64,000 nt of DNA from positions 1-64,000 of the forward strand of contig NIVC01001269.1 in the NCBI GenBank assembly GCA_002269645.1, read 5' to 3'. The position numbers and the translations under genes are program-made. Numbering within the stretch: position 1 is the stretch's first letter; each line of letters opens with the position of its first letter. The DNA comes from Macrostomum lignano. Its lineage: Eukaryota. Below the pieces are notes generated by a model. The model searched no databases and had not been told where the DNA came from. It saw only the letters and a list, made by a program, of their open reading frames with translations. Positions 12,464 to 42,481 of this stretch are shown piece by piece.

Positions 12464-13567
12464 ATGGTGAGTTAAAGCATCATGGTTTTTCTTTGAAGCT
12501 GAAACCACGAATAATCAATGACCTTGACGTTTATCCACCTCTAGACCAACGAGACAATTAGCAACCTCATCCCGTCTGAAGGAGGCTTCGAGAAATTCAA
12601 CAGGTTGATCTTCTCCTGGCTATTCCCCCTCGTGATGGCATTCGGGACCTTCGGCAACGCCTCGTGCATGCTGGTGCTCCTGCGAAGACCAAAGTGCTTT
12701 CCTTTCTCTGTCCGGCTTAGCATGCTCAGCTGCTGCTTCGTGGACTTCCTGCTCGTCGCTGTGAAGTCCATCACGCACTATTTGTCCCCAGTCGTCATGG
12801 GAACAATCCTAAACGTTAGCGACTATAGAAGGACCTCGAGCTTAGCCGTGTGCATCTTATACTACTGGCTAACCATCTGGCTTCTGCATGGTAGCCCGTT
12901 TTTCCGTCTGGGCCTCTGCTTTCACTCGCTTGCCGTGACTCTGGTCCCGCTCAAGCAGGCCACGTTGCTATGCAAAAGGAACGTGGCACTGTACCAGCTG
13001 CTACTGCTGCTGTTGAGTCTTATACCCAGCACCAGGATGTTCAGCACCTACTGGGTTGTTAAGTTACACAAATGCTTTTTCTATGAGGACTGGATTGAGG
13101 TTTTCTACAGGATATTCACGGTGTTTGTAGGCCGAATTGTAGTGGTAGTGTGTCTGTTGGTGACCCTGCTGGTCATCTTGCTGGGCGTAAGGCGCACGCG
13201 GGACCACCTGCGCGGATCGGCAGTGTCTGTCAGAGGGCCCCAGACCAAGGCAGTGACCAGCATCTTTGTGATGACTAGCGCCATTTTCTTTGTGTGTGAA
13301 ATGCCGTACAGCATACTTAGAATGCTTCAGACGCTGGAGTTAGTCCATTGGACAAGGATGCTCAGCTACATTGCTCTTCTGCTGAATGGTCTGATGTACG
13401 TAAACCCGGCCCTGAACTGGCTGCCCTGCCTGATTGGAGCAAAGTTCCGGCTCGAATGCATGAAGATGTTCTGCTGCTTGTGCTGCCGGTCTCTAGATAG
13501 GTCCAGATTCGACGACATGTCAAATATACAGCGGTCAAATCAGCAGAGAGCAACCACTAGTACCTAA
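12464..13567 (+). CDS. Class-A-like 7TM receptor, paralogue 3 (intact, 2 exons)
   Basis: ATG 12464-12466, intron 12467-12544 (gtgagt...ctctag), exon 12545-13567. Near-identical to paralogue 2 through TM5. Confidence 0.85.
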
Positions 13568-16956: not shown

Positions 16957-18007
16957 TCAAACGCATCTTCGACTAGCGCATCGCTTGAGGCCTATGAAAT
17001 CTTCTACAGACTTGTGTTTTCCTGGCTCTTTCCACTGCTGATGCTGTTCGGAACCTGGGGAAATTTATCCTGCCTGCTGGTGCTGTTAAAGAGGCCCAAG
17101 TGCTTTCCACTCTCAGTGAGACTCAGCATGCTCATCTGCTGCGTTATCGATTTTTTACTAGTCTCTGTCAAGTCAGTGACGCACTATCTATCCCCCAACG
17201 TGATGGGAACCATTCTAATGGTGCACGACTACAGAAAGAACACGAGCCACTTTGTGTGCATCGTTTATTACGCCGTCACCTTCTGGCTGCTGCACGGCAG
17301 TCCCTTCATCCGGCTGGGGCTGTGCTTTCACTCGCTGGCGGTCACGCTGGCCCCGCTGAGGCAGGCCAGTCTGCTTCGGAAGCGGAATGTGATCATCTAC
17401 CAGCTAGTGCTGCTCCTGCTCAGCTTTGTGCCATGCATCCGGGTAGCCAGCTCGTTCTGGTCCACCAGATCAGACCGGTCTGTTCCGCAACGATTCAATT
17501 GAAGTTTTCTATCGGATTTTCACTGTTTTTGTGAGCAGACTTTTTGTTGTCTGCTGTCTGCTGGTCACGCTGCTGATTATCTTGATTAGCATGAGGCGCA
17601 CGAGGCAACAACTTGGCGGCTCGGTGGTCTCTGGGGTCAGGAGCGGGCCGCAGACAAAGACTGTCACCAGCATCTTTGTTTCGACCAGTCTGATCTTTTT
17701 TGCTTGCGAAATGCCCTACAATGTGGCCAGGGCCCTGGTCAACCTAGAGCTGGTCAAGGAAAGTGTTTCCATAAAGCAGACGCTGCTCATGCTAAACAAC
17801 CTGCTGTACCTGAATCCGGCGCTAAACTGGATGCCCTACCTGATTGGCCGCAAGTTTCGACGCTTGTACACCGAGTTTTACAGCTGCAACAAGTGCTGCC
17901 GAAGCAGAGCAACCAACGTCCATGGACAGAGACGCGAGCATATTCTGATGCCAGAGAGCTCTGTTCAAAGAAATAATCTTGATAATGAGCAGGTGTACAC
18001 TTACTGA
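16957..18007 (+). pseudogene. Class-A-like 7TM receptor, paralogue 4, single frameshift
   Basis: Acceptor ttccag at 16956, then SNASSTSASLEAYEIFYRLVFSWLFP. The frame breaks near 17479 (about -2 bp versus paralogue 1) and resumes LFRNDSIEVFYRIFTVFVSRLF to the stop at 18007. Could be an assembly indel in an intact gene. Confidence 0.7.
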
Positions 18008-20602: not shown

Positions 20603-23600
20603 CTATCGTAGAGGTGGAAACCTCAGTCTTTTCCTATTTGTCGATCGGTAGCACGCGATCGTCCTGTTTTCATTGGTTGCTGCTGTGGTGTGCGATGCGA
20701 ACGGCAACACTGACATCAGGTCGTCGTTCATCAAATCGAACTGGTTGATAAGTACGTTGCACAGCGTCAGAATGAATCTTCCAGAACACATGCTCCCTTT
20801 GACAACACTATGGATGTACAGACAGTCCTCATGTTGACCTACGTTCAGGTCGCCGACGCTTCGAGCCTCTGTTCGCGCCTGAACATTGCCTCGGTTTGCT
20901 TGAACAATAAAAACCTTGGGCTTGTTTTTCAGCTGCGGGCACATTCTGAACTGTTTGTACACACTTTTCAGTGAGACGCGACTTCCGTCAGCTGAGTACA
21001 CGTAGCCCTGCTCTCCGTGCGACAGGATGCAAAGAACAAGTGCGTCCTCCTCAGCGTACTCTTCTGGCTGCCGGTCAATCGTCAGGAGGTGACCGAAGGT
21101 CTCATGAGACGGGTTATTCAAGCTGAGGACGTCGAAGCCTAGCCGACTAAAGCAAATATAAAATCTATCGTCCATGAGAGATCGCGGTGGAAGATTTGTC
21201 TCTGGTGGAAAATTAGTGACTTGTATTAGGATGGCTCTTCCGCGACGTGCACTTTGCATCGGATAGTACGGAGAAGAATCTGGATCGTCTGGACCACCAC
21301 CATCATCGCCACCACCGCCACCACCTCCACCACCACCACCGCCACCACCTCCACCACCACCACCGCCACCATCGCCACCACCACCACCGCCATCTCCGCC
21401 GTGGCCGTTGCCTCTGTCGCTTGGCTCCTCCACAGGAGAGTTGGATGGATCGCCGCTCTCTTCAGGTTGGTAGCCGCAGCCGGTTTCGCTATCAATACTT
21501 AATCCACTTTCGCTTCCTTCGCTTGTTGGTGCGTGCTGTAATCTAAAATTATAATATATTGCCTGTGTTTGAATACTAATCCAAAGTAACTACGAGATCA
21601 AGATAAAATAGCAAACAACTTACATCAAGCGTGAACAGTTGATGTGACCGGAAAACTTCGCCCATTGATAAGCGTTCATATCCCTCTCTCCGGTCAAGCG
21701 CCAGTAATTCGCGTCTTTCATCAACTCTCCGAATATTTTAATGACCTCAATGTGGCCGCAGCGAGCAGCCCAGATCAGAGGTGTGTTGCCGAAGCAATCT
21801 TTCAGCCATAAATTTGCTCCGAAGTCACACAACATTTTGAAAGTTCCTGCGTGACCCTGTTTTGCTGCGTGGACTGCAGCTGAAAATTTATACACGTCCT
21901 GAAAAACAATTAGCATTTTCTTAGGGTTTCATTCATACCAAAAAGCAGGTTTAAATTTTTAACCTCACCTGGCAATCTATATCAGCTTTCATTTTGATGA
22001 GCTGCTCCAAAACAGATTTCTGGTCATTTATGGCCGCCAGAATCAGCGGGGTTTGTCGAAGATTATTTTCTCTATTTACTTCTGTCGTCATAGTGCTGGC
22101 GTTGTTTGTCAATATTTTCTCAAACGCTATCAGGACTTCTTTGTGGCCTTTGAGGGCGGCCCAGGAAATGGCTGTCCGACCCATTACATCCTGGACACTG
22201 ACCAGGGATGTGTCAGAATTTCTATTGAGCAGCGATAGTACCAGGTCATGTTTGCCTCTGGCGGATGCGATTGTTAGCAGAGTCTGATTCAAAGTCCCAA
22301 ACTTGTGGGCTGTATTCTCCTGAGATCTGCACAGGGCTGCAAGCTGCGCGTCCGACCACTTATCCGGGGACGCAGAGCTGAATATCCTAATTTGTGATGC
22401 GATAGATGGATGTAATGGATGTGATACGAGTATCTTTCACTTTTGATAGCCCCAGATGTATAGCATTTTATTTGTCTATCTAATAAAATAACAATTAAAA
22501 CATCAAATGGAATTTAATTATCAATGGTTGCTAATAAAGTTTGTACTTAAGAGATTAAAGCAGTGGTATCTGCGGATGTCTAAAACCAAGAAACATGGCT
22601 AACAGTGACAATAACTTACTGCACATCGTCAGATGCAGCGCTATTCAAGAAGAATTTCTTGATCAGACTGGTGACTGCAGAAGCTTCAGTACCGAATTTT
22701 TCGGATCCACCTTTCATCTCGGGCATGCCCAGCCGCCTGTTCACCTCTGCCACCACGTTCACAATGTGCTCTTTGCTGAATTTTTCCTCTTGAACAACGG
22801 AGCATAGAACCTCAGCAAGCGATCCCTTCTCGCCTAGTGAGCCACCGCGGCAGAGAAGAAAGTCTTTCTCAGGAAGTTTAAACGACGTCTCTTCCAGCGG
22901 GCAGGCGTTTAGGGTTTCAGGCTGCTGCTCAGTCTGAACAAAGAAGATCTTCGGTTTGTCCTTTAGAAAGGAGCACTGGTTGACTCGGAACCTGGCCACG
23001 ATGTCTCTTACTTCGACCTCTTCACCGTCGCTAGCGAAGAAGCTGGCACCGGTCCCGTGTCCGATGATGAAGCACACGAAGCTGCCCACGTCGCGGAGAT
23101 CGGACCTGACTATTTTGTTGACCGCTGCAAAGATTTCAGCACTAGTAGGCTTACTTGTGCATGGTTGGATTGTAAAACCAAGGTTTTCGAAGGTGTCGGT
23201 AATTATTTTAACTTCCTTCTGTTGGTTGTGGCTTGAGCTGCGATTGTAGGTCTCGACACTTATTACCAAGCACAGGCCTTTTGCCGTAATGCTCTCTGTG
23301 TATATGTCGTTTTCCGGCTTGTTTGAAGTTGAACTAAATGAAAATGTGCAAAATAGATTTCCAAATATTTTCACCACAATGATTCGAAAGATTCAAATTT
23401 TAGCAAAGATTTGTGTGAAGCTGACTTACGCGACAACTTGCTCTTCGCCAATCCTAACATGCGAATGAGCCCCATCAAACTGTAGCTCATGTTCCTCTTG
23501 GCCTTCCGTTTCAAACGCAGGAACCTTGCACGTCAGTCCTCCTTGTTCTGGTTTAGAAAAATATTTAAGTTAGTACTAGATGTACGTCACCTGGTGCCAG

Positions 23601-24810
23601 TGGCCAAAATGCCAGGTCAATTCGATATTCAAGCCTTGTACGAGCTAGAAAGCCAGAAAAGTTAGGAATCGAAAAGTCGGGAAAAACATGCATGTGATTG
23701 CTTTACCTTGATCATAAATGAGAGGATGCTTCATCAATTCGATAGCCAGCATCCGGTCACTCGGTTGTTTTTCAGTGCATTTGTTATAGAAATCTTTCAG
23801 ATTAGCCGAGCAACTTTCCGGAAGCACTGGAGCCCCCTGCCGTTCCACCCGGCGAACAATGGCCAGCATGTTCTTGCACTCCCAGTAGGGCCGTTTGGCG
23901 ATCACCATCTGGTAGATCACGCAGCCGAACGCCCACACATCGGAGGCGCAGCTATAGGGAGGGTCCTCGGTCTCAGAAGACAGGAACATCTCAGGCGCCA
24001 TGAAGTGCGGGTCGCCTCTCTCCCCAGTGGACGGATGCTCCGTTACTGTTTGGAGAATCTGGATGGCCAGACCAAAATTGACGATCACAATTCGATCGCC
24101 CGGACAAACGAGCACCGTCTTGCAGTTGATGTTACGGTGAATCACCGGATCGTTGAGGCCGTGCAAATATGAAAGGGCGTCGCATATCTGAAATCAGTCG
24201 GTGATTCAGGATTTTAATATCGTTGTTTAAATAAGCAGCCGAACACGTTTTTAAAATAATTGCCAATTTTTACTGTTAATTTTCTTATCCGCGTTTAAAT
24301 AAGTGGTCATGGACTTCTTAGTGAAGTCGTGTATTTTTCTATTAGCTCATTAGCTCGTAGAAGTCATTAAGACCCTTCGAGTACCCTTCAAGCCCTGGCT
24401 GGGTTCATGGCAAAAAAAACTTTCGATAATGTACAATTTTGCAATTATTTATTACGCACCTGTCTTGTAAGATTACAAATGCTCTTCTCCGGCAAGCCTT
24501 GTTGGGCGGTGATATGCCGTTCCAGAGTTACCGGTCCCGAAAGCAAGCTCATCTGTACGGTCACGCACATCTGCTCCTTGTCCACCATGATTCGTTTGAA
24601 TTTGACCACGTTTTTGTGATCCAATGCGCACAGCTTCTTAGCCTCTTTGTCGCAAGCCTTAGTCAGAGTTTCTAGCTTATCATGAGCTCCAGCTTCGACA
24701 AGATGCCATGGCAGGCGGATTTGTTTTACAGCCTGCAGTTGCTCTGCCTCGCCCACCGCTTCGGCGTAAGTTTCGCCTCGATCGCCTCTCGATAGAAGCT
24801 CCCGGACCAT
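20603..24810 (-). CDS. Gene A: pseudokinase - caspase-like - ankyrin repeats - poly-Gly - caspase-like protein (1095 aa)
   Basis: Exons 24810-24460, 24187-23707, 23547-23430, 23333-22620, 22377-21969, 21898-21624 and 21542-20603. All introns are GT-AG with phases 0,1,2,2,0,2 and the total is 3288 nt in one open frame. Kinase motifs AVK, HRNINCKT, VNFG, MAPE. Caspase motifs IIGHG/KPKIFFVQTEQQ and ILSHG/KPKVFIVQANRG. Ankyrin motifs GRTAISWAA, QTPLILAA, GNTPLIWAARCGH. An extra upstream exon cannot be excluded. Confidence 0.85.
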
Positions 24811-26083
24811 TGCTTGGCTTAGGGGAGAGTTTCAAAACAGTGTTTTACAGCTTCATGTGAGCTTCAAATTTACCTGTAATTTTTTGCCAGTGCAGTTAAT
24901 GTTTAACTGCAGTGTCTCTGCTTAGCCGTAAAAAAGTGGCAAGGCTTTTTAAAAGCTGTCTAGCTATAGTGTCATTGGTAGCAAGCTTACTCTGTCAAAT
25001 AGAGGCTTGTTTCTCTTGCCATTATAATACCTTATCTGTCTTTTCTCTTTTCTACCCCTAGTTTTCTAGCGCTGTCCAATAATATTTGGTTCTGTATGAA
25101 GAATTAAGTACAGTCTAGACAAGTACTTGCGTTGTAGGGTATAGACTGGGAGAGAAACTATCTGGGGGAGGGTTAATGTACATTAAGTACAGCACGTTGC
25201 TGTCAGGCAGCATTCTGGAGAGTTTTACACACTGCTTTGCATATCAAATTGAAAAGAAAAGAAAAATAATAAAACAAGAGTTGCATTTCATACCCATTTG
25301 TGCAGATGTTGTCTCTTGGCTCTCATGCCATTTTATAGCCAGCAATTCTTAGAACCTGCTCTCGTAGCATGGAGGCTTAAAACCAACTGGTTTTTAGTTA
25401 GAAATTTGGTACCTTATTCTACTGTACAGCGCTTTCCGCTTAGCTAGCTAGTGCAGCCAGTCCCTATCTGTCCTATTTTAGAAAGAAACAGTCATTTGGT
25501 ATATAAATAATAGCTAATTTCTCACTTAGTAGCTATATGTGAATTCGCTATTGGTAATTTCAACTAGCGGCCGTTGCTCACAGAAGCTTGTTGCAAACTT
25601 TTTTTGCCTGTAAAAAACTTTTGAAACATAACAACTAGTGAGAATTAAACAATCGCGAGTGCGACTGTTTGTGGCTTAAATACAAGGTAAGAAGCTTCAC
25701 GACAAGTGCTTATTTGCTAATCGTACCAGCTTTTGTAGGTCCAAGCGACATGTAGCCCCTGTCAGTGACTCCAGGGGGAGGCGTGGCGGGCCACATCATC
25801 CACGCCGAGTCACACTGCCCACAGGCGGAGTAGGAGGTGCTGCTGCTAGCGCTGCAAACGGGGAGGACAGACATGGGCTCGGCGCTTGTTAAACTGCCTT
25901 CTGGCTGACGACCGCGCACGCTCAAGCCTTCACACACGCTCTGTGGTGTGACGCTGAATGATACTGTTTTATTATCGTGTATGCATATAGGCTATCTGGG
26001 GTTAAATAATTATCCTATCTGTTGCTTTGTCCGAAGATATTTACGTTGGCAAAAGACCGCAACCAATTTTCCTTCACTTCAGC
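24811..26083. promoter_or_regulatory. Putative bidirectional promoter/5' UTR region between genes A and B
   Basis: 1273 bp separates the two divergent ATGs. Candidate 5' UTR introns are 25687-26082 (gtaaga...cttcag) for B and a short gtaaat...ctaag intron just upstream of A's ATG. Based on position only. Confidence 0.45.
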
Positions 26084-29000
26084 ATGGTCACAGACTACTC
26101 AATCGGGGAACAGATCGGTCGAGGCGAGTTTGCTAATGTCCATGCCGTCACTGTCAAGGATGCAGACTGGAACCCAAGACCCACTTGTGTAAAGCTGATC
26201 AGACTACCGAAGCACTTGGATCAAGGTTTAGACGAAAAAGAGCTCACTGAATTGGTAGATAAACACAAGCCACTAATTGGACTGAAACACCGGAACTTAG
26301 TTCAAATTGAAGATCTTCATGCCATTCCTCAAGACTACTCTGTCGCAGTGTTCATGGAGCGGTTTCAAGGAAAAACATTGGAATATTTGCTGAAAACGAA
26401 GGGTGCCATCACCCAAGAAGATAAGATTCGGCTCTACTCCAAGCAGGTGAGCACTGCATGGATTTCTATGACGTGTTAATTCACAAGCCCCATAACTAAA
26501 CAGTCTCTGACTTATATCCAATTAATTAGTTGGTTTTTAATTTGATTAAGCACAATTTTCAACTTCTCTGCAGATCTGTGAAGCTTTGAAGTATCTCCAC
26601 CACGACTTAAAGGACCCGGTCATTCACAGAAACATCTGCAGTAAAACAGTTATGATAGACGACAACGATTTAGTTAAGTTAATTGACTTTGGCATATCCA
26701 TTCAGCTGATGGATGCAGTGAGTCATCAGGTGACGCAGTGTCCGAGAGGCCACCCGAACTACATGGCTCCAGAGTTGTTCTTGGAGGAATCCAGCTCTGC
26801 ATTCCAGAGCCTCTACAGTCGGGGCTCAGACATCTGGGCTTTCGGTTGCGTTGTGTACGAGATGACCACTGGTGCGAAACCGCTTGGAGATTGCAGAAAC
26901 ATGCTGGCCATAGTTAACAAAATCAAATATCACGGAGCTCCAAACCTACCGGAGGCGAGCTCTGAGCAGCTGAGAGACTTCTATAAAGGCTGCATGAGAA
27001 AGAATAGGAAAGAGAGAATGTCGGCAGCAGATCTGCTACGACACGAGTTTCTCAGTCCTGGTATGCAATTTTATGGTTTTTTGAGCTAAATTTATATTTT
27101 TCACTGTTATTTTGGCTAGTTGTTAACTAATATAAGCTCTCTTTTAGTATATGACAAACGCTGGGACAATGTCCGTCTGCTGAGCAGAGGAGGCTTCGCA
27201 GAAATTCACGAGGCTCTCACAGACAAGGGCATCAGTTGCGCCGTAAAAACTCTGAAGCTGCCCCTTCAACTAGGTGATCAACGTGACAAAGTGCAGAGAG
27301 AAACCGATCGGGCTATCGAAAGCGAGATGAACCTGTGCAGATTACGGCATGAAAACATCGTAAAGATTTTTGACATTGTGCAGCCAGAGATTGCCACGGT
27401 TGTTGTGTTCATGGAGCTGCTGGATGGCAAAACTTTGGAATTGGTGATAGATGGAAAACCACTGGATGAGGGAATGATTCGTTTTTTCGCTTCACAAGTA
27501 AGCATGAATACTGAGTTGAATTATCAGGTTTGCTCATTATCCTGATCGCATTACTTTCGTTTACTCGCATTTCAGATCTGCAGCGCACTTAGCTACATGC
27601 ACAATCAGCCAGAAAAATCAGCCGTGATTCACAGAGACCTCAACTGCTCAAATATCGTGATTCTAAATGATAGCAAAGTCAAGTTGATTGATTTTGGCTT
27701 ATCGCACAGGCTAGGAACGTCGATAAGTCACAGCACCGCCTCGTCAGTGAAGGGCACGCTGAACTTTATGGCGCCGGAGCTACTGGGTGACGACGAAAAA
27801 ATTGTGTACAGCACAGCATCAGATGTCTGGGCATTCGGTTGCGCCGTCCACCAGATGGCCACTGGAGAGCGGCCGTTCGAGAAAATTAAAAACTTAAATC
27901 GTCTTATTCGCACTCTGAAAGAGCAAGGCGCCCCAGTATTGCCAGATTCGTGTTCGAGTCTGCTGAAAGATTTCTATGCCAGTTGCGTTATGCGCCAGCG
28001 CTCGGAGAGGGCGTCCGCTATGGCGTTGATGAAGCACGAGTTTCTGACTTTCAAGTAAGTCTGCTTGCATTTTGTCTATTAAAGTTCATATTTTATATCA
28101 ACGATAGCTCCGTATTTTTGTACTTTTAGTCGAGCATATTGTTTCCTTTCATTCCTTTAATTAGAGCCTCAGAGTACAAGGATGAAGACCGATACGAATC
28201 CAGTGCTAGCCAGAAAGGAATGTGCGCAATCATTGACATGCTCCCATCTGGCTCGGACTCAAAACTCTCTTCTAAAATCAGCAAAAGTTTTGAAAAGTTC
28301 GATTTCATCGTCAAGTCGCTACCAGACGCAACCTGTCAAACCGCTTGGAGCTTCATCGGGGACATCGCAAACAGTCAAGAGCTTGCAGACTCAAAATGCT
28401 TTGCTTGTTTTGTTATAGCTTCCGGTTCGAACGGACAACTGTACTCAGCTGACAATGATGATAGCATTGAAATCAGAGATCTGCTGGCCAGGTTTCGCTC
28501 TAGCCAGTGTCCCAGCCTGAAGGACAAGCCGAAGCTTTTCTTTATTCAAGCTGTGCAACCGGCCAGTGCAGCCGCCGGCTTGGACGAATCCGCGGCGCGA
28601 ATTCGAGACGATGACTTTCTGGTTTGCATCAACGATGGCAACCTGGATTCATCGTTCGTTGGGACATTGTGCACTGTTTTAGAAGAGGACGAATTTAGCG
28701 ACCTAGACATTGAAGGAGTTGTGGGTGAGGTGAACGATCGCCTAAAACTGGAACCGTTGGTTAAAGCGAAAAACCGGGCACTTAAATTCATGTCGGAAGC
28801 AGTTTCCACTCTGACGAAGAAATTTTACCTGAAGCCGGAACGGGTGAAACCGGATCCCAGGTGAGCTTTTTCGTTGTTTTAGAGGCTTATTGAGAAGAAT
28901 GCACAAAAATTAGCTAAATCAGCAACACTAATTGCTGGTATTCGAGGAGCACTTCATCCTGCAGACAAACAAGTTTCCAGTACCTTACTTACCTAACTTA

Positions 29001-31727
29001 CTTATTGCTCAATGAAACGGTTGGGCCCGATGATGCCATACGTGTCCATCTTTGATCACTTCGCTTCCACCACAAGAGCTTTATTTAAAACAGTTGCTTA
29101 GTGAATAGGAGGGATTTCTTATTCTTCCCATTGATTCATACTGTTTAGCATAGAAAGATAACAAATATTTCAGAGCGGAGTCGCCAGAAAAGTGGGACGA
29201 TGAACAATTGAAGAGGCTAATAGAGGAGGAGGCAAGTCAATGCGCGAACCCGGACTTCACCAGCCAAAAGTACGGCCCGTTGGGACAGACGCTGCTGTCG
29301 ATCGCAGCAGAGAAGGATAGCAGCGAGTTAGTTAAGCTTGCGCTCCAGGCAGCGACCACTGTTCCATCCATTCACTCGGATCTCGACGTGATGGGCAGGA
29401 CGGCCCTTTCCTGCGCCGCAGCCAAAGGATCAGACGCGGTTCTGGCCGCTTTCGAACAAGCATTCATCGATGCGGCCGATGTTCAGAAATCAGTGGTCAA
29501 CGAAGCCAACTATATGCGCCAGACTCCCATCATTGTGGCAGCCAAGCAAAACAAGACGAATGTTCTCGAGAAGTTGGTTCAGATGGGAGCCGATATCAAT
29601 CAGAAGGTAAGGCGGTGTTGATACCCTTTAGTTTTACTCGAAATTATATATTTCAATTACAAAAATGTTTTATCAGCTGTGAATCGCGAAAAACAGACAG
29701 AGATACGAATAGAAATAAACAATGCAGGATAGGAACCAATTGCTGATTTATTGCATAGTTTAAGAAGTAACTTTGTGGCCTTTATCAAAGGGCTCAAGAA
29801 ATTGTACAGCTGTATCCATGCGCAGATGCCCGACCAATCATGATGTTCTCTTTTGCTGTCTCGATGCGGTCTTCTTAAAGCTATTGATACGAAACAAATA
29901 TGTTTGCGTTTTTGCGATCGCCTACCGGCTTTCACGTTGGTCTTTTTGGGACTTTGAGACCTGGCTCTCATGATCTTTAGTCAGATGCATCTTGCGTCGG
30001 AACATTTGAAGGGGTTTTATCTCTGGGTTTGAGTGGCTAGAGTCGTCTGATCTGTATGATCTTCAACAGTTGCATCATTCGATATTTGGCTAATTAGTGT
30101 TAGTGTTTATAACTTCCGTCGTCTCTACCTTCCATTACTTTTAGAGTTTGTACTTTCTGTACATCCAGCTGATTTACATTTCAGGATATTGTAGAAGCCA
30201 CCGCATTGATCTATGCGGCTAAATTCGGATTTGTTGACGCGGTGCGCAAGCTGCTGGAACTCGGCGCCGATGCAGTTCTGGCAGACCGTTCGGATCAAAC
30301 ACCGCTAATTTGGGCAGCTCGCTGTGGCCACACCGATGTTATCAACGCTCTATCTGAAAAGCTTAATAGTCTGGAGCTCTGGAACCACCGGAGCACGCGG
30401 TTGCGCAACTTTACTGCGCTTGAATGGGCTAAGCTCTGCGGCCATGACGCCACTGCGGACAGGATTCAGCAGATGTAAGTAATTGGCGACGTAATTTTTG
30501 TTCCAATGGCTGAATGCTCTGTAGAAATCTGCACCTCCTGCTTTCATGGGCGTAGGAAATTGGCCGTCACGAGGGTCCTCCGTTTCCACCAGACTATTTA
30601 AAATTTTTCCGTGAATATCTCCTAAGATACTAAACTTTTTCCTGTCTTTAACCCTCACAATGACACGCATGAGCCATCCATGATCCTGTTAAGCTGTTAA
30701 GAAGTTTTTAATTATTTAAATATTTTAAATGATCGATGCAAACTATTTCAGAATTCAACAGATAACCGGAGCGACACAGGAGGCGGACGCCACTACCGAC
30801 CCACAATCAAGGGGTGGCGGTGGCGGTGGTGACGGTGCCAGTAGTGAAGCGACAGGAACTTCCGCCGGAGGAAGCGGCGGCGGAGCCGTTGGTGGAGGAG
30901 GTGGTGCTGATGAAGTTGGTGGAAGGGGTGCCGGTGGCGGAGGTGCCGGTGGCGGAGGTGGCAGTGGCAGTGGTGCCGGTGGCGGAGGTGCCGGTGGCGG
31001 AGGTGGTGGTGGCGGAGGTGGTGGTGGCTGGCCTATTTACCATATGAACAGCCCAGTCAGAGGCCTAGCAATAGTTATCAGTCGGAACACGATTCCACCA
31101 AATGCAGGTTTTCAGAACATACATTGGGTGCCGGATCAGCAGACTCAATCTTTTGTCGGTTGTTTAAGCGACCTACGCTTCGATTTCTTAGTGCTACCAA
31201 ATATTCCGAGAAACCTTTATTATAATCTCCGAACCACGGTACTCAATTTGCCGACGTATACCATCTCTGATTCTCTTCTCCTCTGCCTGATGTCTTATGG
31301 CGAACACGGCCGAGTGTATGACTGCAATGGAGAGCGTGTTGAGCTGGAAACAATGTTTCGACAGTTCAGAGAGTGTCCGCTGCTCTCTGGTAAGCCGAAA
31401 ATATTCATGGTCGATGCTGGTCGCGACATTCCTCATGAGAGACTGGTGTTGGAGCAGGCAATTCAGGAGAACGCGGGCCAGCACCAGGACTGTATTTACA
31501 TTTACAGTGTTGTAAAAGGAAACGCCTGCTACCAAGAGGTAGAGAACGGCTTTTGCTTCATGCAGTCCATGGTGAATTTACTGCGCTGGCCAAGTTTCGA
31601 TTCAGCCACGGAAGATTTTGCGTCCTTTCTGACGAAAGTCGTCAGCGACGTGTCGAACAAGTGCACAGCAAAGCAGATTGTCTGCCACACGAGCACCTTG
31701 CAGCGCCATATCATTTTAGGAAATTAA
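26084..31727 (+). CDS. Gene B: pseudokinase - kinase - caspase-like - ankyrin repeats - poly-Gly - caspase-like protein (1357 aa)
   Basis: Exons 26084-26446, 26574-27060, 27148-27497, 27576-28054, 28165-28860, 29174-29606, 30185-30474 and 30752-31727. All introns are GT-AG with phases 0,1,0,2,2,0,2 and the total is 4074 nt in one open frame. Kinase 1 has HRNICSKT/DFG; kinase 2 has CAVK, HRDLNCSN, DFG, GTLNFMAPE. Caspase motifs VIASG/KPKLFFIQAVQP and LMSYG/KPKIFMVDAGRD. About 6 ankyrin repeats. Confidence 0.88.
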
Positions 31728-32888: not shown

Positions 32889-33542
32889 CAGTGGCGTATA
32901 CTCGAGAATTTTATTTGCAGGATTTGCAACATTACAGAGACCAGTATTTGGTCTCTAGGTTAATACCTCGATCGCTTGTTGGGCGCCCCTGTCTCTTGGT
33001 GGGTGCCCCTGTCTCTTGGTGAGCGCCCCTGTCTCTTGGTGTGCGCCCCTGTCTCTTGGTGGGCGCCCCTGTCTCTTGGTGGGCGCCCATATCTCTTGGT
33101 GGGCGCCCCTGTCTCTTGGTGGGCGCCCCTGTCTCTTGGTGGGCGCCCATATCTCTTGGTGGGCGCCCCTGTCTCTTGGTGGGCGCCCCTGTCTCTTGGT
33201 GGGCGCCCCTGTCTCTTGGTGGGCGCCCCTATCTCTTGGTGGGCGCCCCTGTCTCTTGGTGGGCGCCCATATCTCTTGGTGGGTGCCCCTGTCTCTTGGT
33301 GGGCGCCCCTGTCTCTTGGTGGGCGCCCCTGTCTCTTGGTGGGCGCCCCTGTCTCTTGTTGGGCGCCCATATCTCTTGGTGGGCGCCCCTGATCTCTTCT
33401 AACAAGAGAAGGTAATTAAACACGAGCCCCTCTGTCATTCGTCAAGCTCGCGGTTACCTCTTATTTAGTTTCTTGGGGATTACAATTATTATAAAGGGGC
33501 CATTGGGGGGGGGCACCTCCACCCTAGCTGCGTACGCCACTG
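32889..33542. mobile_element. Non-autonomous hAT-type element containing a 20-bp tandem array
   Basis: TIRs cagtggcgta (32889) and tacgccactg (ending 33542); perfect 8-bp TSD agacatgt at 32881-32888 and 33543-33550. Internal array of gggcgcccctgtctcttggt at ~32980-33390. Confidence 0.9.
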
Positions 33543-38200: not shown

Positions 38201-41200
38201 TACCCAAAATTGCGTCGCATTTTTGTTAAAACTAAGTCGCACAGCCAACAAAATTTTGGAGGTTGCGCATGTATGAGCAAGACACTTAACTCTGCATTGC
38301 TTTAGTTCACCCAGCTATAAAATGGGTGCTAGTATTAGCTGGGATAATTGAGGGTGTATGTGGCAACCCCCTAGTCCTTGGACTGAACAGCTATATATGG
38401 CCTTCAGATGTGCCATGCAATAGCTATGGCTGAGCTGTTGGTTGCACATCTGCTTATTATGGCAGATATAATCAATTATTATTATAATAATTATTATTAT
38501 TATTAATATTATTGTTAATATTGCAATATAGAACTTATAAAGGTTGAATTTAGCCAAAATAGTAATTAAAAAATATAGTATCAAAGTAACAATCTTTAAA
38601 TTTTTCTAAGATTTCTTAGTTGAATATTCCTAACTACATATTGTGTAATACTAGTGCCAATGTGAAAGGAAAATAAAATTATTTAAAAAAATTTTCTTTC
38701 TTCACAAAATTTTAGCCTGCTTACTTTGGACCAGTGTGCCAATAATACTTTTGAAAACATTGGTCAGCAAGTGCAGAAGTATTTTACTAAACAAGATGGA
38801 TTCAAGGTTGGCACTGCTTTGGTAAGTAGAAGAATGCTTCATATGCCATTTTTTATATTTTAATAGTAGAATTTGAGTTCAATTGTTAAAGGCAGGTGGG
38901 TGAAAGGTTGTGAAGGGAGGTGGGTAAAGGGAGGTGGATGAAGGGAGATGGAATGATGGATGAAGGGTGGAGGGTAAAGGGAGGTGGGTGAATGGAGGTG
39001 GTAAAGGGAGGTGGGTGAAAGGAGGTGGTAAATGGAGGTGTTAAGGGGAGGTAGGTGAAGGGAGGTGGTGAAGGGAGGTGGGTGAAAGGAGGTGGTGAAG
39101 GAAGGTGGGGGAAGGGAGGTGGTGAAGGGAGGTGGGTGAAAGGAGGTGGTGAATGGAGGTGTTGAAGGGAGGTAGGTGAAGGGAGGTGGTGAAGGGAGGT
39201 GGGGAAGGGAGGTGGGGGAAGGGAGGTGGTGAAGGGAGGTGGGTGAAAGGAGGTGGTGAAGGGAGGTGGGTGAAAGGAGGTGGTAAAGGGAGGTAGGTAA
39301 AGGGAGGTGGTGAAAAGAGGTGGGTGAAAGGTGGTGAAGGGAGGTGGGTGAATGGAGGTGGTGAAGGGAGGTAGGTAAAGGGAGGTGGTGAAAAGAGGTG
39401 GGTGAAAGAAGGTGGGGGAAGGGAGGTGGTGAAGGGAGGTGGGTGAATGGAGGTGGTGAAGGGAGGTAGGTAAAGGGAGGTGGTGAAAAGAGGTGGGTGA
39501 AAGAAGGTGGGGGAAGGGAGGTGGTGAAGGGAGGTGGTGAAGGGAGGTGGTGAAGGGAGGTGGGTGAAAGGAGGTGGTGAATGGAGGTGTTGAAGGGAGG
39601 TAGGTGAAGGGAGGTGGTGAAGGGAGGTGGGGGAAGGGAGGTGGGGAAGGGAGGTGGTGAAGGGAGGTGGGTGAAAGGAGGTGGTGAAGGGAGGTGGGTG
39701 AAAGGAGGTGGTAAAGGGAGGTAGGTAAAGGGAGGTGGTGAAAAGAGGTGGGTGAAAGGTGGTGAAGGGAGGTGGGTGAATGGAGGTGGTGAAGGGAGGT
39801 AGGTAAAGGGAGGTAGGTAAAGGGAGGTGGTGAAAAGAGGTGGGTGAAAGGTGGTGAAGGGAGGTGGGTGAATGGAGGTGGTGAAGGGAGGTAGGTAAAG
39901 GGAGGTAGGTAAAGGGAGGTGGTGAAAAGAGGTGGGTGAAAGGTGGTGAAGGGAGGTGGGTGAATGGAGGTGGTGAAGGGAGGTAGGTAAAGGGAGGTGG
40001 TGAAAAGAGGTGGGTGAAAGGAGCTGGGGGAAGGGAGGTGGGTGAACGGAAGTGAGGTTAAAAATGAACACCGACAGTTTTTGCATTCTCATCTCGCATT
40101 CGCTTCGGCAGGTGTTGCTCCTGCAGAACCCCGATCTGCTGCCTAATCGGATGCAACAGCTGGTGGCTCTCTACCTGCTCTGGGAGTTGACCCGAGTTGA
40201 CCCGCCCAATGTGAACCCATTTCAACCCGCGTTTGTTTACGCCATGCGATCGGACGAGAACGATACGAGGCATTTTCGCGTTCCCTGCCTGCCGCTGCAG
40301 GAGCGCGTGTTCTTGTACAGCCTGCTGCAGAGCACCCACGCCAGCGGCCAGCCTTCTAGGGAACTCTTGAAGAAAACCCCTCAGCAGGTTTGTAAAACTG
40401 TTGGTGTCTGTCATCTTGAAATGCACGAGTCAGTGTTTCATTAATCATTACGAGGCAATAAATCAGCCTCAAACCTAAATAAATCATATATCTGCAACCA
40501 AAAATCATCATTCAGAAACCATAAATCATCATTCAGAAACCATAAATCATCATTCAGAAACCATAAATCATCATTCAAAAACCATAAATCATCATTCAAA
40601 AACCATAAATCATCATTCAGAAACCATAAATCATCATTCAAAAACCATAAATCATCATTCAGAAACCATAAATCATCACTCAAAAACCATAAATCATCAT
40701 TCAGAAACCATAAATCATCATTCAGAAACCATAAATCATCATTCAAAAACCATAAATCATCATTCAGAAACCATAAATCATCACTCAAAAACCATAAATC
40801 ATCATTCAGAAACCATAAATAATCATTCAAAAACCATAAATCATCATTCAAAAACCATAAATCATCATTCAGAAACCATAAATCATCATTCAAAAACCAT
40901 AAATCATCATTCAGAACCATAAATCGTCATTAAAAAGCCATAAATCATCCTTCAGAAACCATAAATCATCATTCAGACGCTATAAATTATCCCCAAATCA
41001 CCGCAGATAGCCAACAGTGTATTCCCGCCCAACGTGATTCCCAGCGAGCTGGACCTGAGTTTCCTAGAAAGCCCATACGCGGAGCGGGCCAAGGAGATGC
41101 CGGTGGTGAGTCGGGTTGCTATGCCGTGCGTCCTGTCCGATCCCGAGCGCCGTCTGGCCTCGATGGAATCTTACAGCGGCTCGGGCAGCTCTGCGGAGGC

Positions 41201-42481
41201 CCAGCGCCAGGTGCTGGACTCGCTGCTCACCGGTGATCAGGCAGCTGTCCGATCTCACCTGCGGCCGGAGTTTCTCCTGCTAGCGCCGCCGCTGCACAGC
41301 GTCGGGATCGAGGACGAGCTCGTGTGGATGTCGCCGACTGGCCTTGAGCACACCGCTCAGTGGGACGCCTCTATGTGCCAGAGCGGCTCTTCCGGGGGTG
41401 AGTGACATTTGAAGGTCAAACTAGTTATTTTCTAAGCTGCTAAAATGCTACAGGTGTCGAATCTCACCCAACATCACCTGAGAATCTCACCCAACCCCAC
41501 CTGAGAATCTCATCCAACCCTATCTGAGAATCTCACCAGAATCTCACCCAATCCCACGTGAGAATCTCACCCAACCCCATCTGAGAATCTCACCCAACCC
41601 CATCTGAGAATCTCACCCAACCCCATCTGAGAATCTCACCCAACCCCATCTGAGAATCTCACCCAACCCCATCTGAGAATCTCACCCAATCCCCACGTGA
41701 GAATCTCACCCAACCCCATCTGAGAATCTCACCCAACCCCATCTGAGAATCTCACCCAACCTCGTCTAATCTCACCCAACCCCACCTGTGAATCTCACCC
41801 AACCTCACCTGAGAATCTCACCCAACCCCTATCCTCCCAGCCGAGACCCGGAAGCTGATGGTGCGGGCCTTCAAGCAGACTCTGCAACAGTCGCAGATTC
41901 GCCAGCTAAACGAGGCCATCTCCCAGGATCCCAAGCTGATCAGCCTAAGCGGCATGTCTCCATCCCGGCTGCCCGAACTGGTTGAGCACAATCCCCTGGT
42001 TGCTATCGAGGTGCTGCTCACCTTGATGAAGGCCAGCTCGCCCCAAGTCACAGACTATTTCTCTGTCCTAGTGAACATGGAGATGTCCCTGCACAGCATG
42101 GAGGTTGTCAACCGCCTGACAACCAGTGTTGAACTGCCTGCGGAGTTCATCCACCTGTACATCAGCAACTGCATATCGTCGTGCGAGTCAACCAAGGACA
42201 AGTACATGCAGAACAGGCTGGTCAGGCTGGTGTGCGTGTTCCTGCAGTCGCTGATCCGCAATAAGATTATTGACGTCAAGAATATCTACATCGAGGTGCA
42301 GGCTTTCTGCATCGAGTTCAACCGCATCCGGGAGGCTGCTGGCTTGTTCCGGCTGCTAAAATCCTTGGAGTCCAGCGATGGCAGCGTCGACTCCGCCGCC
42401 GCTTCTGCCGCTCTGGCTGCTGGCGGCGGCGGCCCGGGTTCGAATCCGCCTAGCGCCGCCACCACGCCTTCGAAGCCGTAG
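35275..42481 (+). CDS. CNOT11: CCR4-NOT transcription complex subunit 11 (483 aa, 5 exons)
   Basis: Exons 35275-35312, 38716-38821, 40112-40387, 41007-41397 and 41841-42481 join in frame (1452 nt). The C-terminal domain [35 protein letters not shown]...[25 protein letters not shown]...[22 protein letters not shown] and the N-terminal LLQNPDLLP...ALYLLWE are recognisable CNOT11 sequence. Confidence 0.95.
35401..35450. other. Short near-perfect palindrome (hairpin) in CNOT11 intron 1
   Basis: ctcacc-gc-cagtgatgtc...gacatcactg-ag-ggtgag. Confidence 0.6.
36453..37111. mobile_element. MITE with TA target duplication
   Basis: TIRs ggccccatagtgcggaagga and tccttccgcactatggcc, flanked by TA at 36451-52 and 37112-13. 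Subterminal gta(c/t)gaca motif repeats. Confidence 0.75.
37641..37937. mobile_element. hAT-type MITE, copy 1
   Basis: TIRs catacatgcgcaac and gttgcgcatgtgtg; 8-bp TSD tgtagcct at 37633-37640 and 37938-37945. Confidence 0.85.
38031..38275. mobile_element. hAT-type MITE, copy 2 (opposite orientation)
   Basis: TIRs catacatgcgcaac and gttgcgcatgtatg; 8-bp TSD agcaagac at 38023-38030 and 38276-38283. Body is the reverse complement of copy 1. Confidence 0.9.
38891..40052. repeat. Purine/G-rich degenerate satellite in CNOT11 intron 2
   Basis: Repeats of gaagggaggtggt, gggaggtgggt and aaaggagg. Confidence 0.9.
40495..40980. repeat. 21-bp minisatellite in CNOT11 intron 3
   Basis: Unit aaaccataaatcatcattca(g/a). 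Confidence 0.9.
41460..41830. repeat. 23-bp minisatellite in CNOT11 intron 4
   Basis: Unit gagaatctcacccaaccccatct, running up to the acceptor at 41840. Confidence 0.9.

What the first reader, a model, noticed from the sequence alone, without database searches (positions are those of the whole stretch)
20603..31727. Four caspase folds inactivated by four different substitutions; possible single-chain pseudo-dimer
Seen: the His/Cys dyads are A1 H/E (QTEQQ), A2 H/N (QANRG, codon aac), B1 S/V (IASG, QAVQP) and B2 Y/G (MSYG, DAGRD). The structural motifs (G.a.ii, L..lGF, c.i..G, C..L..KPK.F.vq, terminal st..k.f.l strand) are kept and the large-small subunit linkers are short. Established: caspases work as dimers of catalytic domains, and cFLIP regulates caspase-8 by heterodimerising. 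Inference: the two domains in one chain may pair across the ankyrin/Gly linker as an autoinhibited clamp, dimerise with real caspases, or bait pathogen caspase inhibitors.
Basis: partly seen in the sequence, partly recalled or inferred. Interest (0 to 1): 0.75.

Follow-up and report, generated by a model that had tools for sequence, protein, structure and literature searches.

The report
Flatworm gene pair of dead caspases
Two neighbouring flatworm (Macrostomum) genes each encode a large kinase–caspase–ankyrin–caspase protein in which both caspase domains have lost their catalytic residues but are still conserved, so they are probably non-cutting regulators of sister genes that still carry a working caspase.

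Summary
The region holds two head-to-head multi-exon genes from Macrostomum lignano or a very close relative. Gene A is on the minus strand (1095 aa) and gene B on the plus strand (1357 aa).

Each gene encodes kinase-like domain(s), caspase-like domain d1, ankyrin repeats, a Gly-rich linker and caspase-like domain d2. All four caspase-like domains match Pfam Peptidase_C14 (E 1e-17 to 1e-20).

Three points are new:
- **A family with live members.** Paralogues P0004 and P0005/P0006 have a dead d1 but a live d2 (QSCRD, QACRG). P0004-like and P0006 also sit head-to-head at a second locus.
- **Fewer inactivations than four.** d1 was probably dead in the family ancestor. The d2 exons of A and B group together. 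The dead positions then drift (QAV here, QAA in the 95% identical second copy).
- **The genes are maintained.** Reading frames are intact in two copies and dN/dS is about 0.3.

A's kinase is also dead (HRN, NFG).

The cFLIP-like or caspase-X-like regulator reading is plausible but untested. A full-length AlphaFold model of P0004 gave no confident inter-domain packing (pTM 0.31). This is a new variant of a known kind, of moderate interest.

The parts
20603..24810 (-). Gene A, 7 exons, 1095 aa: 24810-24460, 24187-23707, 23547-23430, 23333-22620, 22377-21969, 21898-21624, 21542-20603. Architecture: pseudokinase, d1 (A1), ankyrin repeats, poly-Gly linker, d2 (A2).
   Evidence: GT-AG junctions in frame with no internal stop. 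The mini-exon and junctions match the database model P0002. All seven exons map without gaps onto the second copy L001.
23707..24810 (-). Gene A kinase-like domain, predicted pseudokinase. HRD is HRN, the catalytic-loop Asn is Thr, and DFG is NFG. The beta3 Lys and APE are kept.
   Evidence: Pfam Pkinase / PK_Tyr_Ser-Thr. Kinase alignment. dN/dS 0.14 against L001.
22640..23290 (-). A1: N-terminal pseudo-caspase domain (d1), GHG / QTE. It lacks the caspase-3 R64 equivalent and has a truncated L3 loop.
   Evidence: Pfam PF00656 E=3.3e-20. PDB alignment. Alignment with caspase-3. 61% identical to d1 of P0004.
21624..22377 (-). Gene A ankyrin-repeat region (two exons).
   Evidence: Pfam Ank_2/Ank/Ank_3/Ank_4. 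dN/dS 0.20.
21278..21542 (-). Gene A Ser/Glu-rich then poly-Gly linker, at the start of the last exon.
   Evidence: Translation. The reading frame is continuous in both copies. A low-complexity linker sits at the same place in all paralogues.
20606..21277 (-). A2: C-terminal pseudo-caspase domain (d2), SHG / QANRG. It keeps the equivalents of R64, His, Gly and Gln161, has Asn (AAC) in place of Cys, and has a 6-residue deletion in the L3 (SWR) region.
   Evidence: Pfam E=8e-18. PDB alignment to caspase-2 QACRG.. The same motifs occur in P0001 / L001.
24811..26083 (.). 1.27-kb intergenic region between the divergent start codons of A and B. It is presumed to be a shared bidirectional promoter; this is an inference.
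   Evidence: Gene models. The same head-to-head layout occurs at L001 and at the live locus L002.
26084..31727 (+). Gene B, 8 exons, 1357 aa: 26084-26446, 26574-27060, 27148-27497, 27576-28054, 28165-28860, 29174-29606, 30185-30474, 30752-31727. Architecture: kinase-like K1, kinase K2, d1 (B1), ankyrin repeats, Gly-rich linker, d2 (B2).
   Evidence: Canonical splice sites in frame. NCBI's model for the second copy is 1356 aa. The partial UniRef model P0060 has the same order.
26084..27060 (+). Gene B kinase-like domain K1, predicted pseudokinase (HRN, catalytic-loop Asn is Thr; DFG kept).
   Evidence: Pfam. Kinase alignment. dN/dS 0.45.
27148..28054 (+). Gene B kinase domain K2, with a complete catalytic set: beta3 Lys (AVK), HRDLNCSN, DFG and APE. 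This is the only enzyme domain in either gene that looks active.
   Evidence: Pfam Pkinase E=1.2e-31 for the C-lobe exon. Nearest solved kinases are PLK2, ASK1, MEKK2, PAK and WNK, at about 1e-25. Alignment. dN/dS 0.30.
28208..28837 (+). B1: N-terminal pseudo-caspase domain (d1), ASG / QAV, with a truncated L3 loop.
   Evidence: Pfam E=2.6e-17. PDB alignment. AlphaFold2 pLDDT 87.3, pTM 0.87. Foldseek caspase-7/6/3 TM 0.75-0.78. dN/dS 0.33, p=0.009.
29174..30474 (+). Gene B ankyrin-repeat region (two exons, 29174-29606 and 30185-30474, separated by a 578-nt intron).
   Evidence: Homologous to gene A's ankyrin exons, which have Pfam Ank hits. Splice sites.
30752..31022 (+). Gene B Gly-rich linker, about 90 residues.
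   Evidence: Translation.
31023..31724 (+). B2: C-terminal pseudo-caspase domain (d2), SYG / DAGRD. The equivalents of R64, His, Gln161, Cys and R207 are all replaced.
   Evidence: Pfam E=2.8e-17. PDB alignment. Alignments. Codons.

Best explanation
The region holds a head-to-head pair of paralogous genes belonging to a family found so far only in Macrostomum. The family encodes large initiator-type caspases with the layout kinase-like module, pseudo-caspase (d1), ankyrin repeats, flexible Gly-rich linker, caspase (d2).

In the family's 'live' members (P0004, P0005/P0006) d1 is catalytically dead and d2 keeps His and Cys. That is the same logic as coral caspase-X.

The window holds the 'dead' twin of the live locus. 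It appears to be a block duplicate of a head-to-head pair in which both d2 domains have also lost the dyad. Gene A has lost its kinase catalytic residues as well.

Shown here: the architecture, the loss of catalytic residues, the existence of live paralogues in the same head-to-head layout, and purifying selection on the dead copies.

Inferred: A and B no longer cut anything. They act as non-catalytic partners, either cFLIP-like decoys or tuners. Their caspase-like domains would pair through the usual beta6/alpha5 dimer surface, and their ankyrin and kinase-like modules would dock to the same platform as the live paralogues, setting the threshold for activation. Whether d1 and d2 pair within one chain (in cis) or between chains (in trans) is open.
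For: Architecture and dead dyads.

Fold: B1 model pLDDT 87, Foldseek caspase-7/6/3 TM 0.75-0.78. In the P0004 model, d1 and d2 show the caspase strand/helix order, and a caspase-7 hit has TMt 0.82.

Live paralogues: P0004 d2 is SHG/QSCRD; P0005/P0006 d2 is SHG/QACRG with SFR; all have a dead d1.

Same head-to-head layout at the live locus L002: a P0004-like gene on the minus strand and P0006 on the plus strand.

Position-wise orthology: quartets give (A,P0004)|(B,P0005) in 500/500 for d1, 372/500 for the kinase and 460/500 for the whole protein.

Maintenance:
- Reading frames of 7 exons (A) and at least the first 6 exons (B) are intact in two copies that are 95-97% identical.
- dN/dS is 0.30 for A (34 synonymous, 35 non-synonymous; p=1e-6) and 0.34 for B.
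- B1 alone gives 0.33 (p=0.009); all caspase-like domains pooled give 0.44 (p=0.009).
- A2 is no further from human caspase-3 (28% identity) than the live d2 domains are (28-30%).

Precedents: coral caspase-X has an inactive N-terminal and an active C-terminal caspase domain, is modelled as a cis cFLIP/caspase-8-like pair, and kills more strongly when the dead domain is deleted (PMC4715348). A Macrostomum lignano caspase with a kinase pro-domain branches as sister to the ankyrin caspases, which are themselves sister to the DED (caspase-8-type) caspases (PMC11463336). The nearest non-Macrostomum single-domain hits that I named are DED caspase-8-like proteins.
Against: There is no direct evidence of any interaction.
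- The AlphaFold2 model of full-length P0004 gave pTM 0.31, with no confident placement of d1 against d2. Only 16 alignment rows were available.
- The spliced A and B proteins could not be modelled.
- Taken alone, A1 (4 synonymous, 9 non-synonymous; dN/dS 0.64; p=0.32) and A2 (2 and 4; 0.60; p=0.42) do not differ significantly from neutrality.
- The B2 exon of the second copy was outside the fetched locus, so constraint on B2 is untested.
- No expression data were examined. The database transcript-style models cover only part of A (P0002/P0003) and B (P0060).
- B keeps one kinase domain that looks active, so its function may not depend on caspase partners at all.
Confidence: 0.5

Rival explanations
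1. Kinase-centred scaffold. A and B work in a signalling role that has nothing to do with caspase partners. B would act through its intact K2 kinase, and A as a pseudokinase adaptor. The dead caspase-like domains would serve only as structural or ligand-binding modules.
For: B-K2 keeps Lys, HRD..N, DFG and APE. The kinase-like and ankyrin parts show the strongest constraint: A kinase dN/dS 0.14, A ankyrin 0.20, B K2 0.30. Kinase-caspase fusions occur in other contexts, for example the Macrostomum ANK-kinase-caspase P0079 and a fish PYRIN-kinase-caspase P0107.
Against: B1 on its own is under purifying selection (dN/dS 0.33, p=0.009). The core framework motifs are kept in all four domains. This suggests the caspase-like surfaces still matter. 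A has no active kinase either.
Confidence: 0.25
2. Decaying duplicates. After a block or whole-genome duplication the window's pair became redundant and is drifting towards pseudogenes. The dead dyads would be the first visible damage.
For: Both d2 domains and A's kinase lost catalytic residues at one locus. The former Cys position still changes (QAV versus QAA). A1 and A2 alone have dN/dS of about 0.6, not significantly below 1.
Against: There is no stop codon, frameshift or broken splice site in 15 exons here, nor in the 13 exons that could be compared in the second copy. Overall dN/dS is 0.30-0.34 with p<=1e-6. A2 is as similar to human caspase-3 as the live d2 domains are.
Confidence: 0.12
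3. Obligate intramolecular clamp. d1 and d2 of the same chain pair across the ankyrin/Gly linker as a closed pseudo-dimer. That closed form would itself be the functional state, for example an autoinhibited sensor opened by a ligand of the ankyrin repeats.
For: The coral caspase-X model shows such a cis pair (PMC4715348). A disordered linker of about 90-130 residues precedes d2 in every paralogue. The beta6-type motif SL(T/I/N)KK is invariant in d1.
Against: AlphaFold2 gave no confident inter-domain geometry (pTM 0.31), and the d1 C-terminal strand has pLDDT below 50. The beta6 motif is conserved in all caspases, so it does not discriminate. No covariation test is possible with six sequences.
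Confidence: 0.1
4. Residual protease activity through a different nucleophile or a shifted active site.
For: A2 keeps His, Gly, Gln161, the R64 equivalent and the 'RG' of QACRG.
Against: No Cys or Ser lies at or next to the nucleophile position in A2 (QANRG). B2, A1 and B1 have also lost the P1-pocket arginines, and d1 lacks most of loop L3.
Confidence: 0.03

Closest known systems
Coral caspase-X (Acropora millepora/digitifera; PMC4715348)
   Same: One chain carries an N-terminal caspase-like domain without the catalytic His/Cys and a second caspase domain downstream. The dead domain was proposed to pair with the second one like cFLIP with caspase-8, and was shown to damp killing. The live paralogues P0004-P0006 follow this dead-then-live order.
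   Different: The flatworm proteins add a kinase-like module in front, and ankyrin repeats plus a Gly-rich linker between the two domains. In the window's genes A and B the second domain is dead too. No close sequence relationship was seen: among the named non-Macrostomum hits to the profile there were no corals. The resemblance is therefore most likely convergent.
cFLIP (CFLAR), the vertebrate pseudo-caspase paralogue of caspase-8/-10
   Same: It is a duplicated initiator-type caspase gene that lost His/Cys, stayed under selection, and regulates its live paralogues by heterodimerising (established knowledge; reviewed in PMC13545259, listed). The A/B family sits near the DED/ankyrin-caspase clade (PMC11463336).
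   Different: No death-effector domains are present; Pfam finds only Pkinase, Peptidase_C14 and Ank. There are two dead caspase-like domains per chain. Heterodimerisation is not shown.
Flatworm ankyrin-pro-domain ('ANK') caspases and the Macrostomum lignano kinase-pro-domain caspase (PMC11463336)
   Same: Ankyrin repeats lie directly upstream of the C-terminal caspase domain and a kinase-like domain lies at the N-terminus. The species is the same, and very likely the family is the one the paper places as sister to the ANK caspases.
   Different: The paper does not mention an internal pseudo-caspase domain, tandem caspase domains or catalytically dead members. It also describes ANK caspases as restricted to parasitic flatworms, whereas Macrostomum encodes ANK-caspase architectures (P0081 and this family).
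Other multi-caspase-domain predicted proteins in animals
   Same: Two or more Peptidase_C14 domains in one predicted chain. Examples are Anabrus XP_068084304, Branchiostoma XP_066297229, Medioppia proteins, and the jellyfish Sanderia ANK-caspase-ANK-caspase P0046.
   Different: They score 200-270 bits against the family profile, compared with more than 540 bits for true family members. They have no kinase module. Several may be fused gene models, and their dyads were not examined.

Membership tests
Caspase family (Peptidase C14A, caspase-hemoglobinase fold) | Significant match to the Peptidase_C14 profile over the whole domain | tested here: met
   PF00656 E=3.3e-20, 8e-18, 2.6e-17 and 2.8e-17 for A1, A2, B1 and B2. 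phmmer hits to solved caspases at 1e-12 to 1e-16.
Caspase family (Peptidase C14A, caspase-hemoglobinase fold) | Alpha/beta fold with strand and helix order beta1-alpha1-beta2-alpha2-beta3-alpha3-beta4 | beta5-alpha4-alpha5-beta6 | tested here: met
   B1 model: pLDDT 87.3, pTM 0.87, Foldseek caspase-7/6/3 TM 0.75-0.78. d1 and d2 in the P0004 model show the same order. A1, A2 and B2 were not modelled and are assigned by homology only.
Caspase family (Peptidase C14A, caspase-hemoglobinase fold) | Catalytic His-Cys dyad (caspase-3 H121/C163) | tested here: not met
   A1 H/E, A2 H/N, B1 S/V, B2 Y/G. They are therefore pseudo-caspases, not active peptidases.
Caspase family (Peptidase C14A, caspase-hemoglobinase fold) | P1-aspartate pocket (caspase-3 R64, Q161, R207) | tested here: not met
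   A2 keeps R64 and Q161 but has a 6-residue deletion at the SWR site. B2 has I, D and Q at these positions. A1 and B1 lack R64 and most of loop L3.
cFLIP-type pseudo-caspase regulators | Tandem death-effector domains N-terminal to the pseudo-caspase domain | tested here: not met
   No DED hit in Pfam scans of the exons. The N-terminus is kinase-like.
cFLIP-type pseudo-caspase regulators | Heterodimerises with, and regulates, a live paralogous caspase | not testable with these tools
   Live paralogues exist (P0004-P0006). No binding data are available. The AlphaFold2 model had no inter-domain confidence.
Coral caspase-X architecture | N-terminal inactive caspase domain followed by a C-terminal active caspase domain in one chain | tested here: not met
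   Met by paralogues P0004-P0006. Not met by A or B, whose C-terminal domain is also inactive.
Coral caspase-X architecture | Sequence relationship to the Acropora caspase-X clade | not tested
   No coral appeared among the 20 profile-search hits that I named. No tree including caspase-X was built.
Flatworm ANK caspases (PMC11463336) | Ankyrin repeats as the region immediately N-terminal of the caspase domain | tested here: met
   Pfam Ank_2/Ank/Ank_3/Ank_4 hits on the two exons preceding the linker and d2 in gene A. B is homologous there.
Flatworm ANK caspases (PMC11463336) | Placement in or next to the ANK-caspase clade, sister to DED caspases | tested here: inconclusive
   The literature places a Macrostomum lignano kinase-pro-domain caspase as sister to the ANK caspases. 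Here the nearest named non-Macrostomum single-domain hits were DED caspase-8-like proteins. No parasite ANK caspase was included in a tree.
Eukaryotic protein kinases | Pkinase fold plus catalytic Lys, HRD Asp, catalytic-loop Asn and DFG Asp | tested here: inconclusive
   The fold is met for all three kinase-like domains. The catalytic set is complete only in B-K2. A has HRN, Thr and NFG; B-K1 has HRN and Thr. A and B-K1 are therefore predicted pseudokinases.

The most novel reading that the evidence does not exclude
A whole head-to-head gene pair has been converted into all-pseudoenzyme partners: dead kinase, dead caspase, dead caspase. These partners would regulate the 'live' twin pair elsewhere in the genome. 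That would be a cFLIP-like control layer that arose independently in a flatworm lineage reported to lack FADD. The terminal exon (linker plus d2) would be evolving in concert within each locus, so that the two genes of a pair are switched live or dead together.
Probability: 0.25. Interest if true: 0.65.

Novelty: new variant of a known kind. Interest (0 to 1): 0.45.

Why it matters
Pseudo-caspases such as cFLIP are key switches between survival, apoptosis and necroptosis in vertebrates. How often such switches evolved, and from what, is poorly known outside vertebrates and corals.

This flatworm family offers a natural comparison:
- one gene pair with a live C-terminal caspase;
- a duplicated pair in which that domain, and in one gene the kinase too, is dead but still conserved.

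Macrostomum lignano is a laboratory model in which RNAi and transgenesis are available (my own knowledge, not checked here). The idea that dead paralogues tune live ones could therefore be tested directly.

The result also corrects two points in the record. This family has an internal pseudo-caspase domain and ankyrin repeats, not just a 'kinase pro-domain'. Ankyrin-caspase architectures are present in a free-living flatworm.

Tried and rejected
1. RIPK-like kinase idea (RIPK4 is kinase plus ankyrin). Rejected: the nearest solved kinases are PLK2/3, ASK1, MEKK2, PAK, MST and WNK at about 1e-25, with no RIPK among them.
2. AlphaFold2 on the spliced A protein with the family alignment. I modelled paralogue P0004 instead. 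The domains fold, but pTM is 0.31, so the pseudo-dimer question stays open. The tool returns no coordinates or PAE, so contacts could not be read in any case.
3. Word-indexed homology searches with A2 and with a d2 profile. These found only the near-identical Macrostomum fragment and generic caspases at 26-28% identity. The exhaustive profile search was needed to see the family and the other multi-domain caspases.
4. Exact look-up of my B protein, to find the window's own record and the B2 exon of the second copy.
5. Recent gene conversion between A and B. There is no long near-identical inverted repeat. Only the poly-Gly tracts and stretches of 27-89 nt at 71-85% identity match. Any conversion of the last exon is therefore old.
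6. Literature search by locus tags (Mlig003293, Mlig030125, Mlig018903) found nothing. The supplements of PMC11463336 are not held, so I could not tell which Macrostomum protein that paper used.
7. First model of gene A. It missed a 118-nt mini-exon, and was corrected after comparison with P0002.

Full report
**What is at the coordinates**

The window is eukaryotic. ORFs are short and exon-like, and GC is about 0.45. A search with the A2 domain found one protein at 98% identity, Macrostomum lignano BOX15_Mlig003293g3. A 20.7-kb locus from the NCBI M. lignano assembly (L001, NIVC01000006.1) is collinear with the window at 94-97% nucleotide identity over most of its length, through genes and intergenic DNA. 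The window is therefore M. lignano, as a second genomic copy or another assembly, or a very close relative.

The stretch 20603-31727 contains two divergently transcribed genes, which I assembled from canonical GT-AG junctions.
- **Gene A**, minus strand, 7 exons, 1095 aa.
- **Gene B**, plus strand, 8 exons, 1357 aa.

Neither model has an internal stop. NCBI's model of the B copy in L001 is 1356 aa. The UniRef model P0002 confirms A's junctions, including a 118-nt mini-exon that I first missed.

**Checking the observation**

All four caspase-like domains pass Pfam Peptidase_C14 far above threshold, with E from 3e-20 to 3e-17. Residue-by-residue alignments to solved caspases put the following at the His and Cys positions (codons):

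| Domain | His position | Cys position |
|---|---|---|
| A1 | GHG | QTE |
| A2 | SHG | QANRG |
| B1 | ASG | QAV |
| B2 | SYG | DAGRD |

The Asn codon AAC in A2 is two base changes away from a Cys codon. It is also present in the second copy, so it is not a sequencing error.

- The two d1 domains lack the R64 equivalent and most of loop L3.
- A2 keeps R64, His, Gly, Gln and 'RG', but has a 6-residue deletion around the SWR site.
- B2 has replaced all five key residues.

B1 is the most atypical domain. Its AlphaFold2 model is confident (pLDDT 87.3, pTM 0.87), and its best structural matches are caspase-7/-6/-3 with TM 0.75-0.78.

Upstream of d1, gene A has one kinase-like domain and gene B has two. 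The kinase alignment shows:
- A: HRN in place of HRD, Thr in place of the catalytic-loop Asn, and NFG in place of DFG;
- B-K1: HRN and Thr;
- B-K2: Lys, HRD..N, DFG and APE all present.

Gene A is thus predicted to have no working enzyme domain at all. Gene B has only K2. The kinase is not RIPK-like; the nearest solved structures are PLK2, ASK1, MEKK2, PAK, MST and WNK. Ankyrin repeats follow d1. A low-complexity, Gly-rich stretch of about 90-130 residues precedes d2 in every family member.

**The family**

A search with full-length A found four full or partial M. lignano paralogues with the same Pfam content, and nothing comparable elsewhere. Their sequences are informative.
- P0004: kinase HRD/DFG, d1 GHG/QAE, d2 SHG/QSCRD.
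- P0005/P0006: d1 GCG/QTH, d2 SHG/QACRG with SFR.

The family plan is therefore a dead d1 plus a live d2. Only the window's two genes have a dead d2.

An exhaustive profile search of 1.84 billion representative proteins gave more than 540 bits only for these M. lignano proteins. The next hits, at 200-270 bits, are unrelated multi-caspase-domain predictions from a cricket, amphioxus, a mite, a fish and a jellyfish. The first single-domain hits outside Macrostomum that I named are DED caspase-8-like proteins.

M. lignano also encodes ANK-kinase-caspase (P0079), ANK-caspase (P0081) and Ras/Roc-caspase (P0109) proteins.

**A live twin locus**

P0006 lies in NCBI contig NIVC01000166.1, head-to-head with a P0004-like gene. 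All the expected exons can be read there, including d2 with SHG/QSCRD. The layout matches A(-)/B(+) in the window.

Quartet analysis pairs A with P0004 and B with P0005 for d1 (500/500), the kinase (372/500) and the whole protein (460/500). This fits a block duplication of an ancestral head-to-head pair.

The d2 domain tells a different story: (A,B)|(P0004,P0005) in 491/500. A sliding window places the switch at about A residue 740-790, which is the start of the last exon. Counts of shared derived residues agree: about 32 columns for the by-locus grouping in d2 against 18 for the alternative, and the reverse in d1. A2 and B2 also share the derived motif GQH.DC.YI.SVVKG..C.

Either the last exon was homogenised within each locus long ago, or the history is otherwise mosaic. 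There is no sign of recent conversion. I regard this as unexplained.

**Consequences for 'four different substitutions'**

Because d1 is dead in every member and A1 shares its Glu with P0004, d1 was most likely inactivated once, before the paralogues diverged. Because the d2 exons of A and B are sisters, one inactivation could account for both. After that, the positions are free to change. The former Cys codon of B1 reads Val here and Ala in the 95%-identical second copy. Four different residue pairs are therefore what drift at unconstrained sites would produce. They are not evidence of four independent hits.

**Are the dead genes maintained?**

All seven A exons, and the six B exons that fall inside L001, align to the second copy with one in-frame 6-nt indel and no stops. 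Nei-Gojobori dN/dS values, with one-sided binomial tests where run, are as follows:

| Region | Synonymous / non-synonymous | dN/dS | p |
|---|---|---|---|
| A, whole | 34 / 35 | 0.30 | 1e-6 |
| B, available part | 51.5 / 65.5 | 0.34 | <0.0001 |
| A kinase | 14 / 7 | 0.14 | <0.0001 |
| A ankyrin | 11 / 8 | 0.20 | 0.0008 |
| B-K2 | 13 / 14 | 0.30 | 0.003 |
| B1 | 11 / 13 | 0.33 | 0.009 |
| A1 | 4 / 9 | 0.64 | 0.32 |
| A2 | 2 / 4 | 0.60 | 0.42 |
| All caspase-like domains pooled | 17 / 26 | 0.44 | 0.009 |

A1 and A2 have too few changes to test alone. The genes as a whole are under purifying selection. For the caspase-like domains this is shown for B1 and for the pool, but not for each domain. 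B2 of the second copy was out of reach.

**How it most likely works**

Known facts:
- Caspase catalytic domains act as dimers through beta6/alpha5.
- cFLIP, a dead paralogue, regulates caspase-8 by heterodimerising.
- In coral caspase-X, a dead N-terminal domain in the same chain damps the live C-terminal domain and was modelled as a cis cFLIP/caspase-8-like pair (PMC4715348).

The live flatworm paralogues have the same dead-then-live order. I infer that d1 is a built-in regulatory partner domain in this family. I further infer that A and B, having lost d2 activity as well, act as non-catalytic partners of the live pair, whether decoys, dampers or platform components. They would use the retained caspase-like surfaces, the ankyrin repeats and the kinase-like modules.

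This step is inference. The only structural test I could run, AlphaFold2 on full-length P0004 with 16 alignment rows, folded the domains but gave pTM 0.31 and no confident inter-domain arrangement. It neither supports nor excludes a cis pseudo-dimer.

The rival readings are a kinase-centred scaffold, slow decay, an obligate cis clamp, and residual activity. They are listed with their tests in the Rival explanations section.

**Comparison with what is known**

[quoted passage not shown] It did not mention an internal pseudo-caspase, tandem domains or dead members (PMC11463336).

Pseudo-caspases (cFLIP) and dead-plus-live tandem caspases (caspase-X) are known. What is new here:
- the combination kinase-like, pseudo-caspase, ankyrin, caspase;
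- the existence of a fully dead but conserved gene pair beside a live pair;
- the exon-level discordance of d2.

I class it as a new variant of a known kind, of moderate interest.

Noticed in passing
window 20603-21542 and 30752-31727 versus L002 3434-4288 and the last exon of P0006: The last exon (linker plus d2) groups by locus: A with B, and P0004 with P0005. The kinase and d1 group by gene position: A with P0004, and B with P0005. The switch falls at about the start of the last exon. This suggests old exon-level gene conversion between the inverted neighbours, or a mosaic origin.
   Followed up: partly
L001 6557-9973 and 10001-10732 (NCBI GCA_002269645.1, NIVC01000006.1): The public annotation splits the second copy of gene A into an 846-aa protein and a 243-aa 'partial' protein at the poly-Gly run, although the reading frame is continuous. 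The UniRef models P0002 and P0003 also stop before d2. No database entry therefore shows gene A as a two-caspase-domain protein.
   Followed up: yes
proteins P0081, P0109, P0079 (Macrostomum lignano; not in the window): M. lignano encodes ANK-caspase, Ras/Roc-caspase and ANK-kinase-caspase proteins. The last has a canonical QACRG and a complete kinase catalytic set, and its caspase domain groups weakly (64%) with the d1 clade. The 2024 survey describes ANK caspases as restricted to parasitic flatworms.
   Followed up: partly
window 2418-3224, 6634-7638, 12605-13567, 17014-18007 (+): A tandem array of four paralogous seven-transmembrane receptor-like genes. Only the first has a Pfam hit, and it is weak (7tm_1, E=3e-5). 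The array is also present in the second copy L001.
   Followed up: partly
window 53969-56296 (+): A 775-aa open reading frame with reverse transcriptase, RNase H and integrase domains, i.e. the pol of a Ty3/gypsy-type LTR retroelement. It lies in a block of GC 0.60 against a background of about 0.45.
   Followed up: partly
window 41858-42481 (+): An exon encoding a CNOT11 domain (CCR4-NOT subunit 11; PF10155, E=4e-52).
   Followed up: no
window 32960-33400, 38860-40092, 40441-40920, 62880-63890: Long tandem repeats that read open in several frames. The block at 38-40 kb has a GC skew of 0.68.
   Followed up: no
proteins P0107 (Alosa pseudoharengus) and P0046 (Sanderia malayensis): A fish PYRIN-kinase-caspase and a jellyfish ANK-caspase-ANK-caspase prediction. 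Kinase-caspase and ankyrin-tandem-caspase fusions have therefore arisen, or been predicted, in distant animals.
   Followed up: no
window 23855-23881 versus 26889-26915: The kinase of A and the extra first kinase (K1) of B share the HRN change, the DPVIHRNI context, and a 27-nt stretch at 85% identity around CKNMLAIV / CRNMLAIV. The paralogue at B's position in the live locus (P0005/P0006) has only one kinase-like domain. K1 may therefore be a B-specific acquisition.
   Followed up: partly
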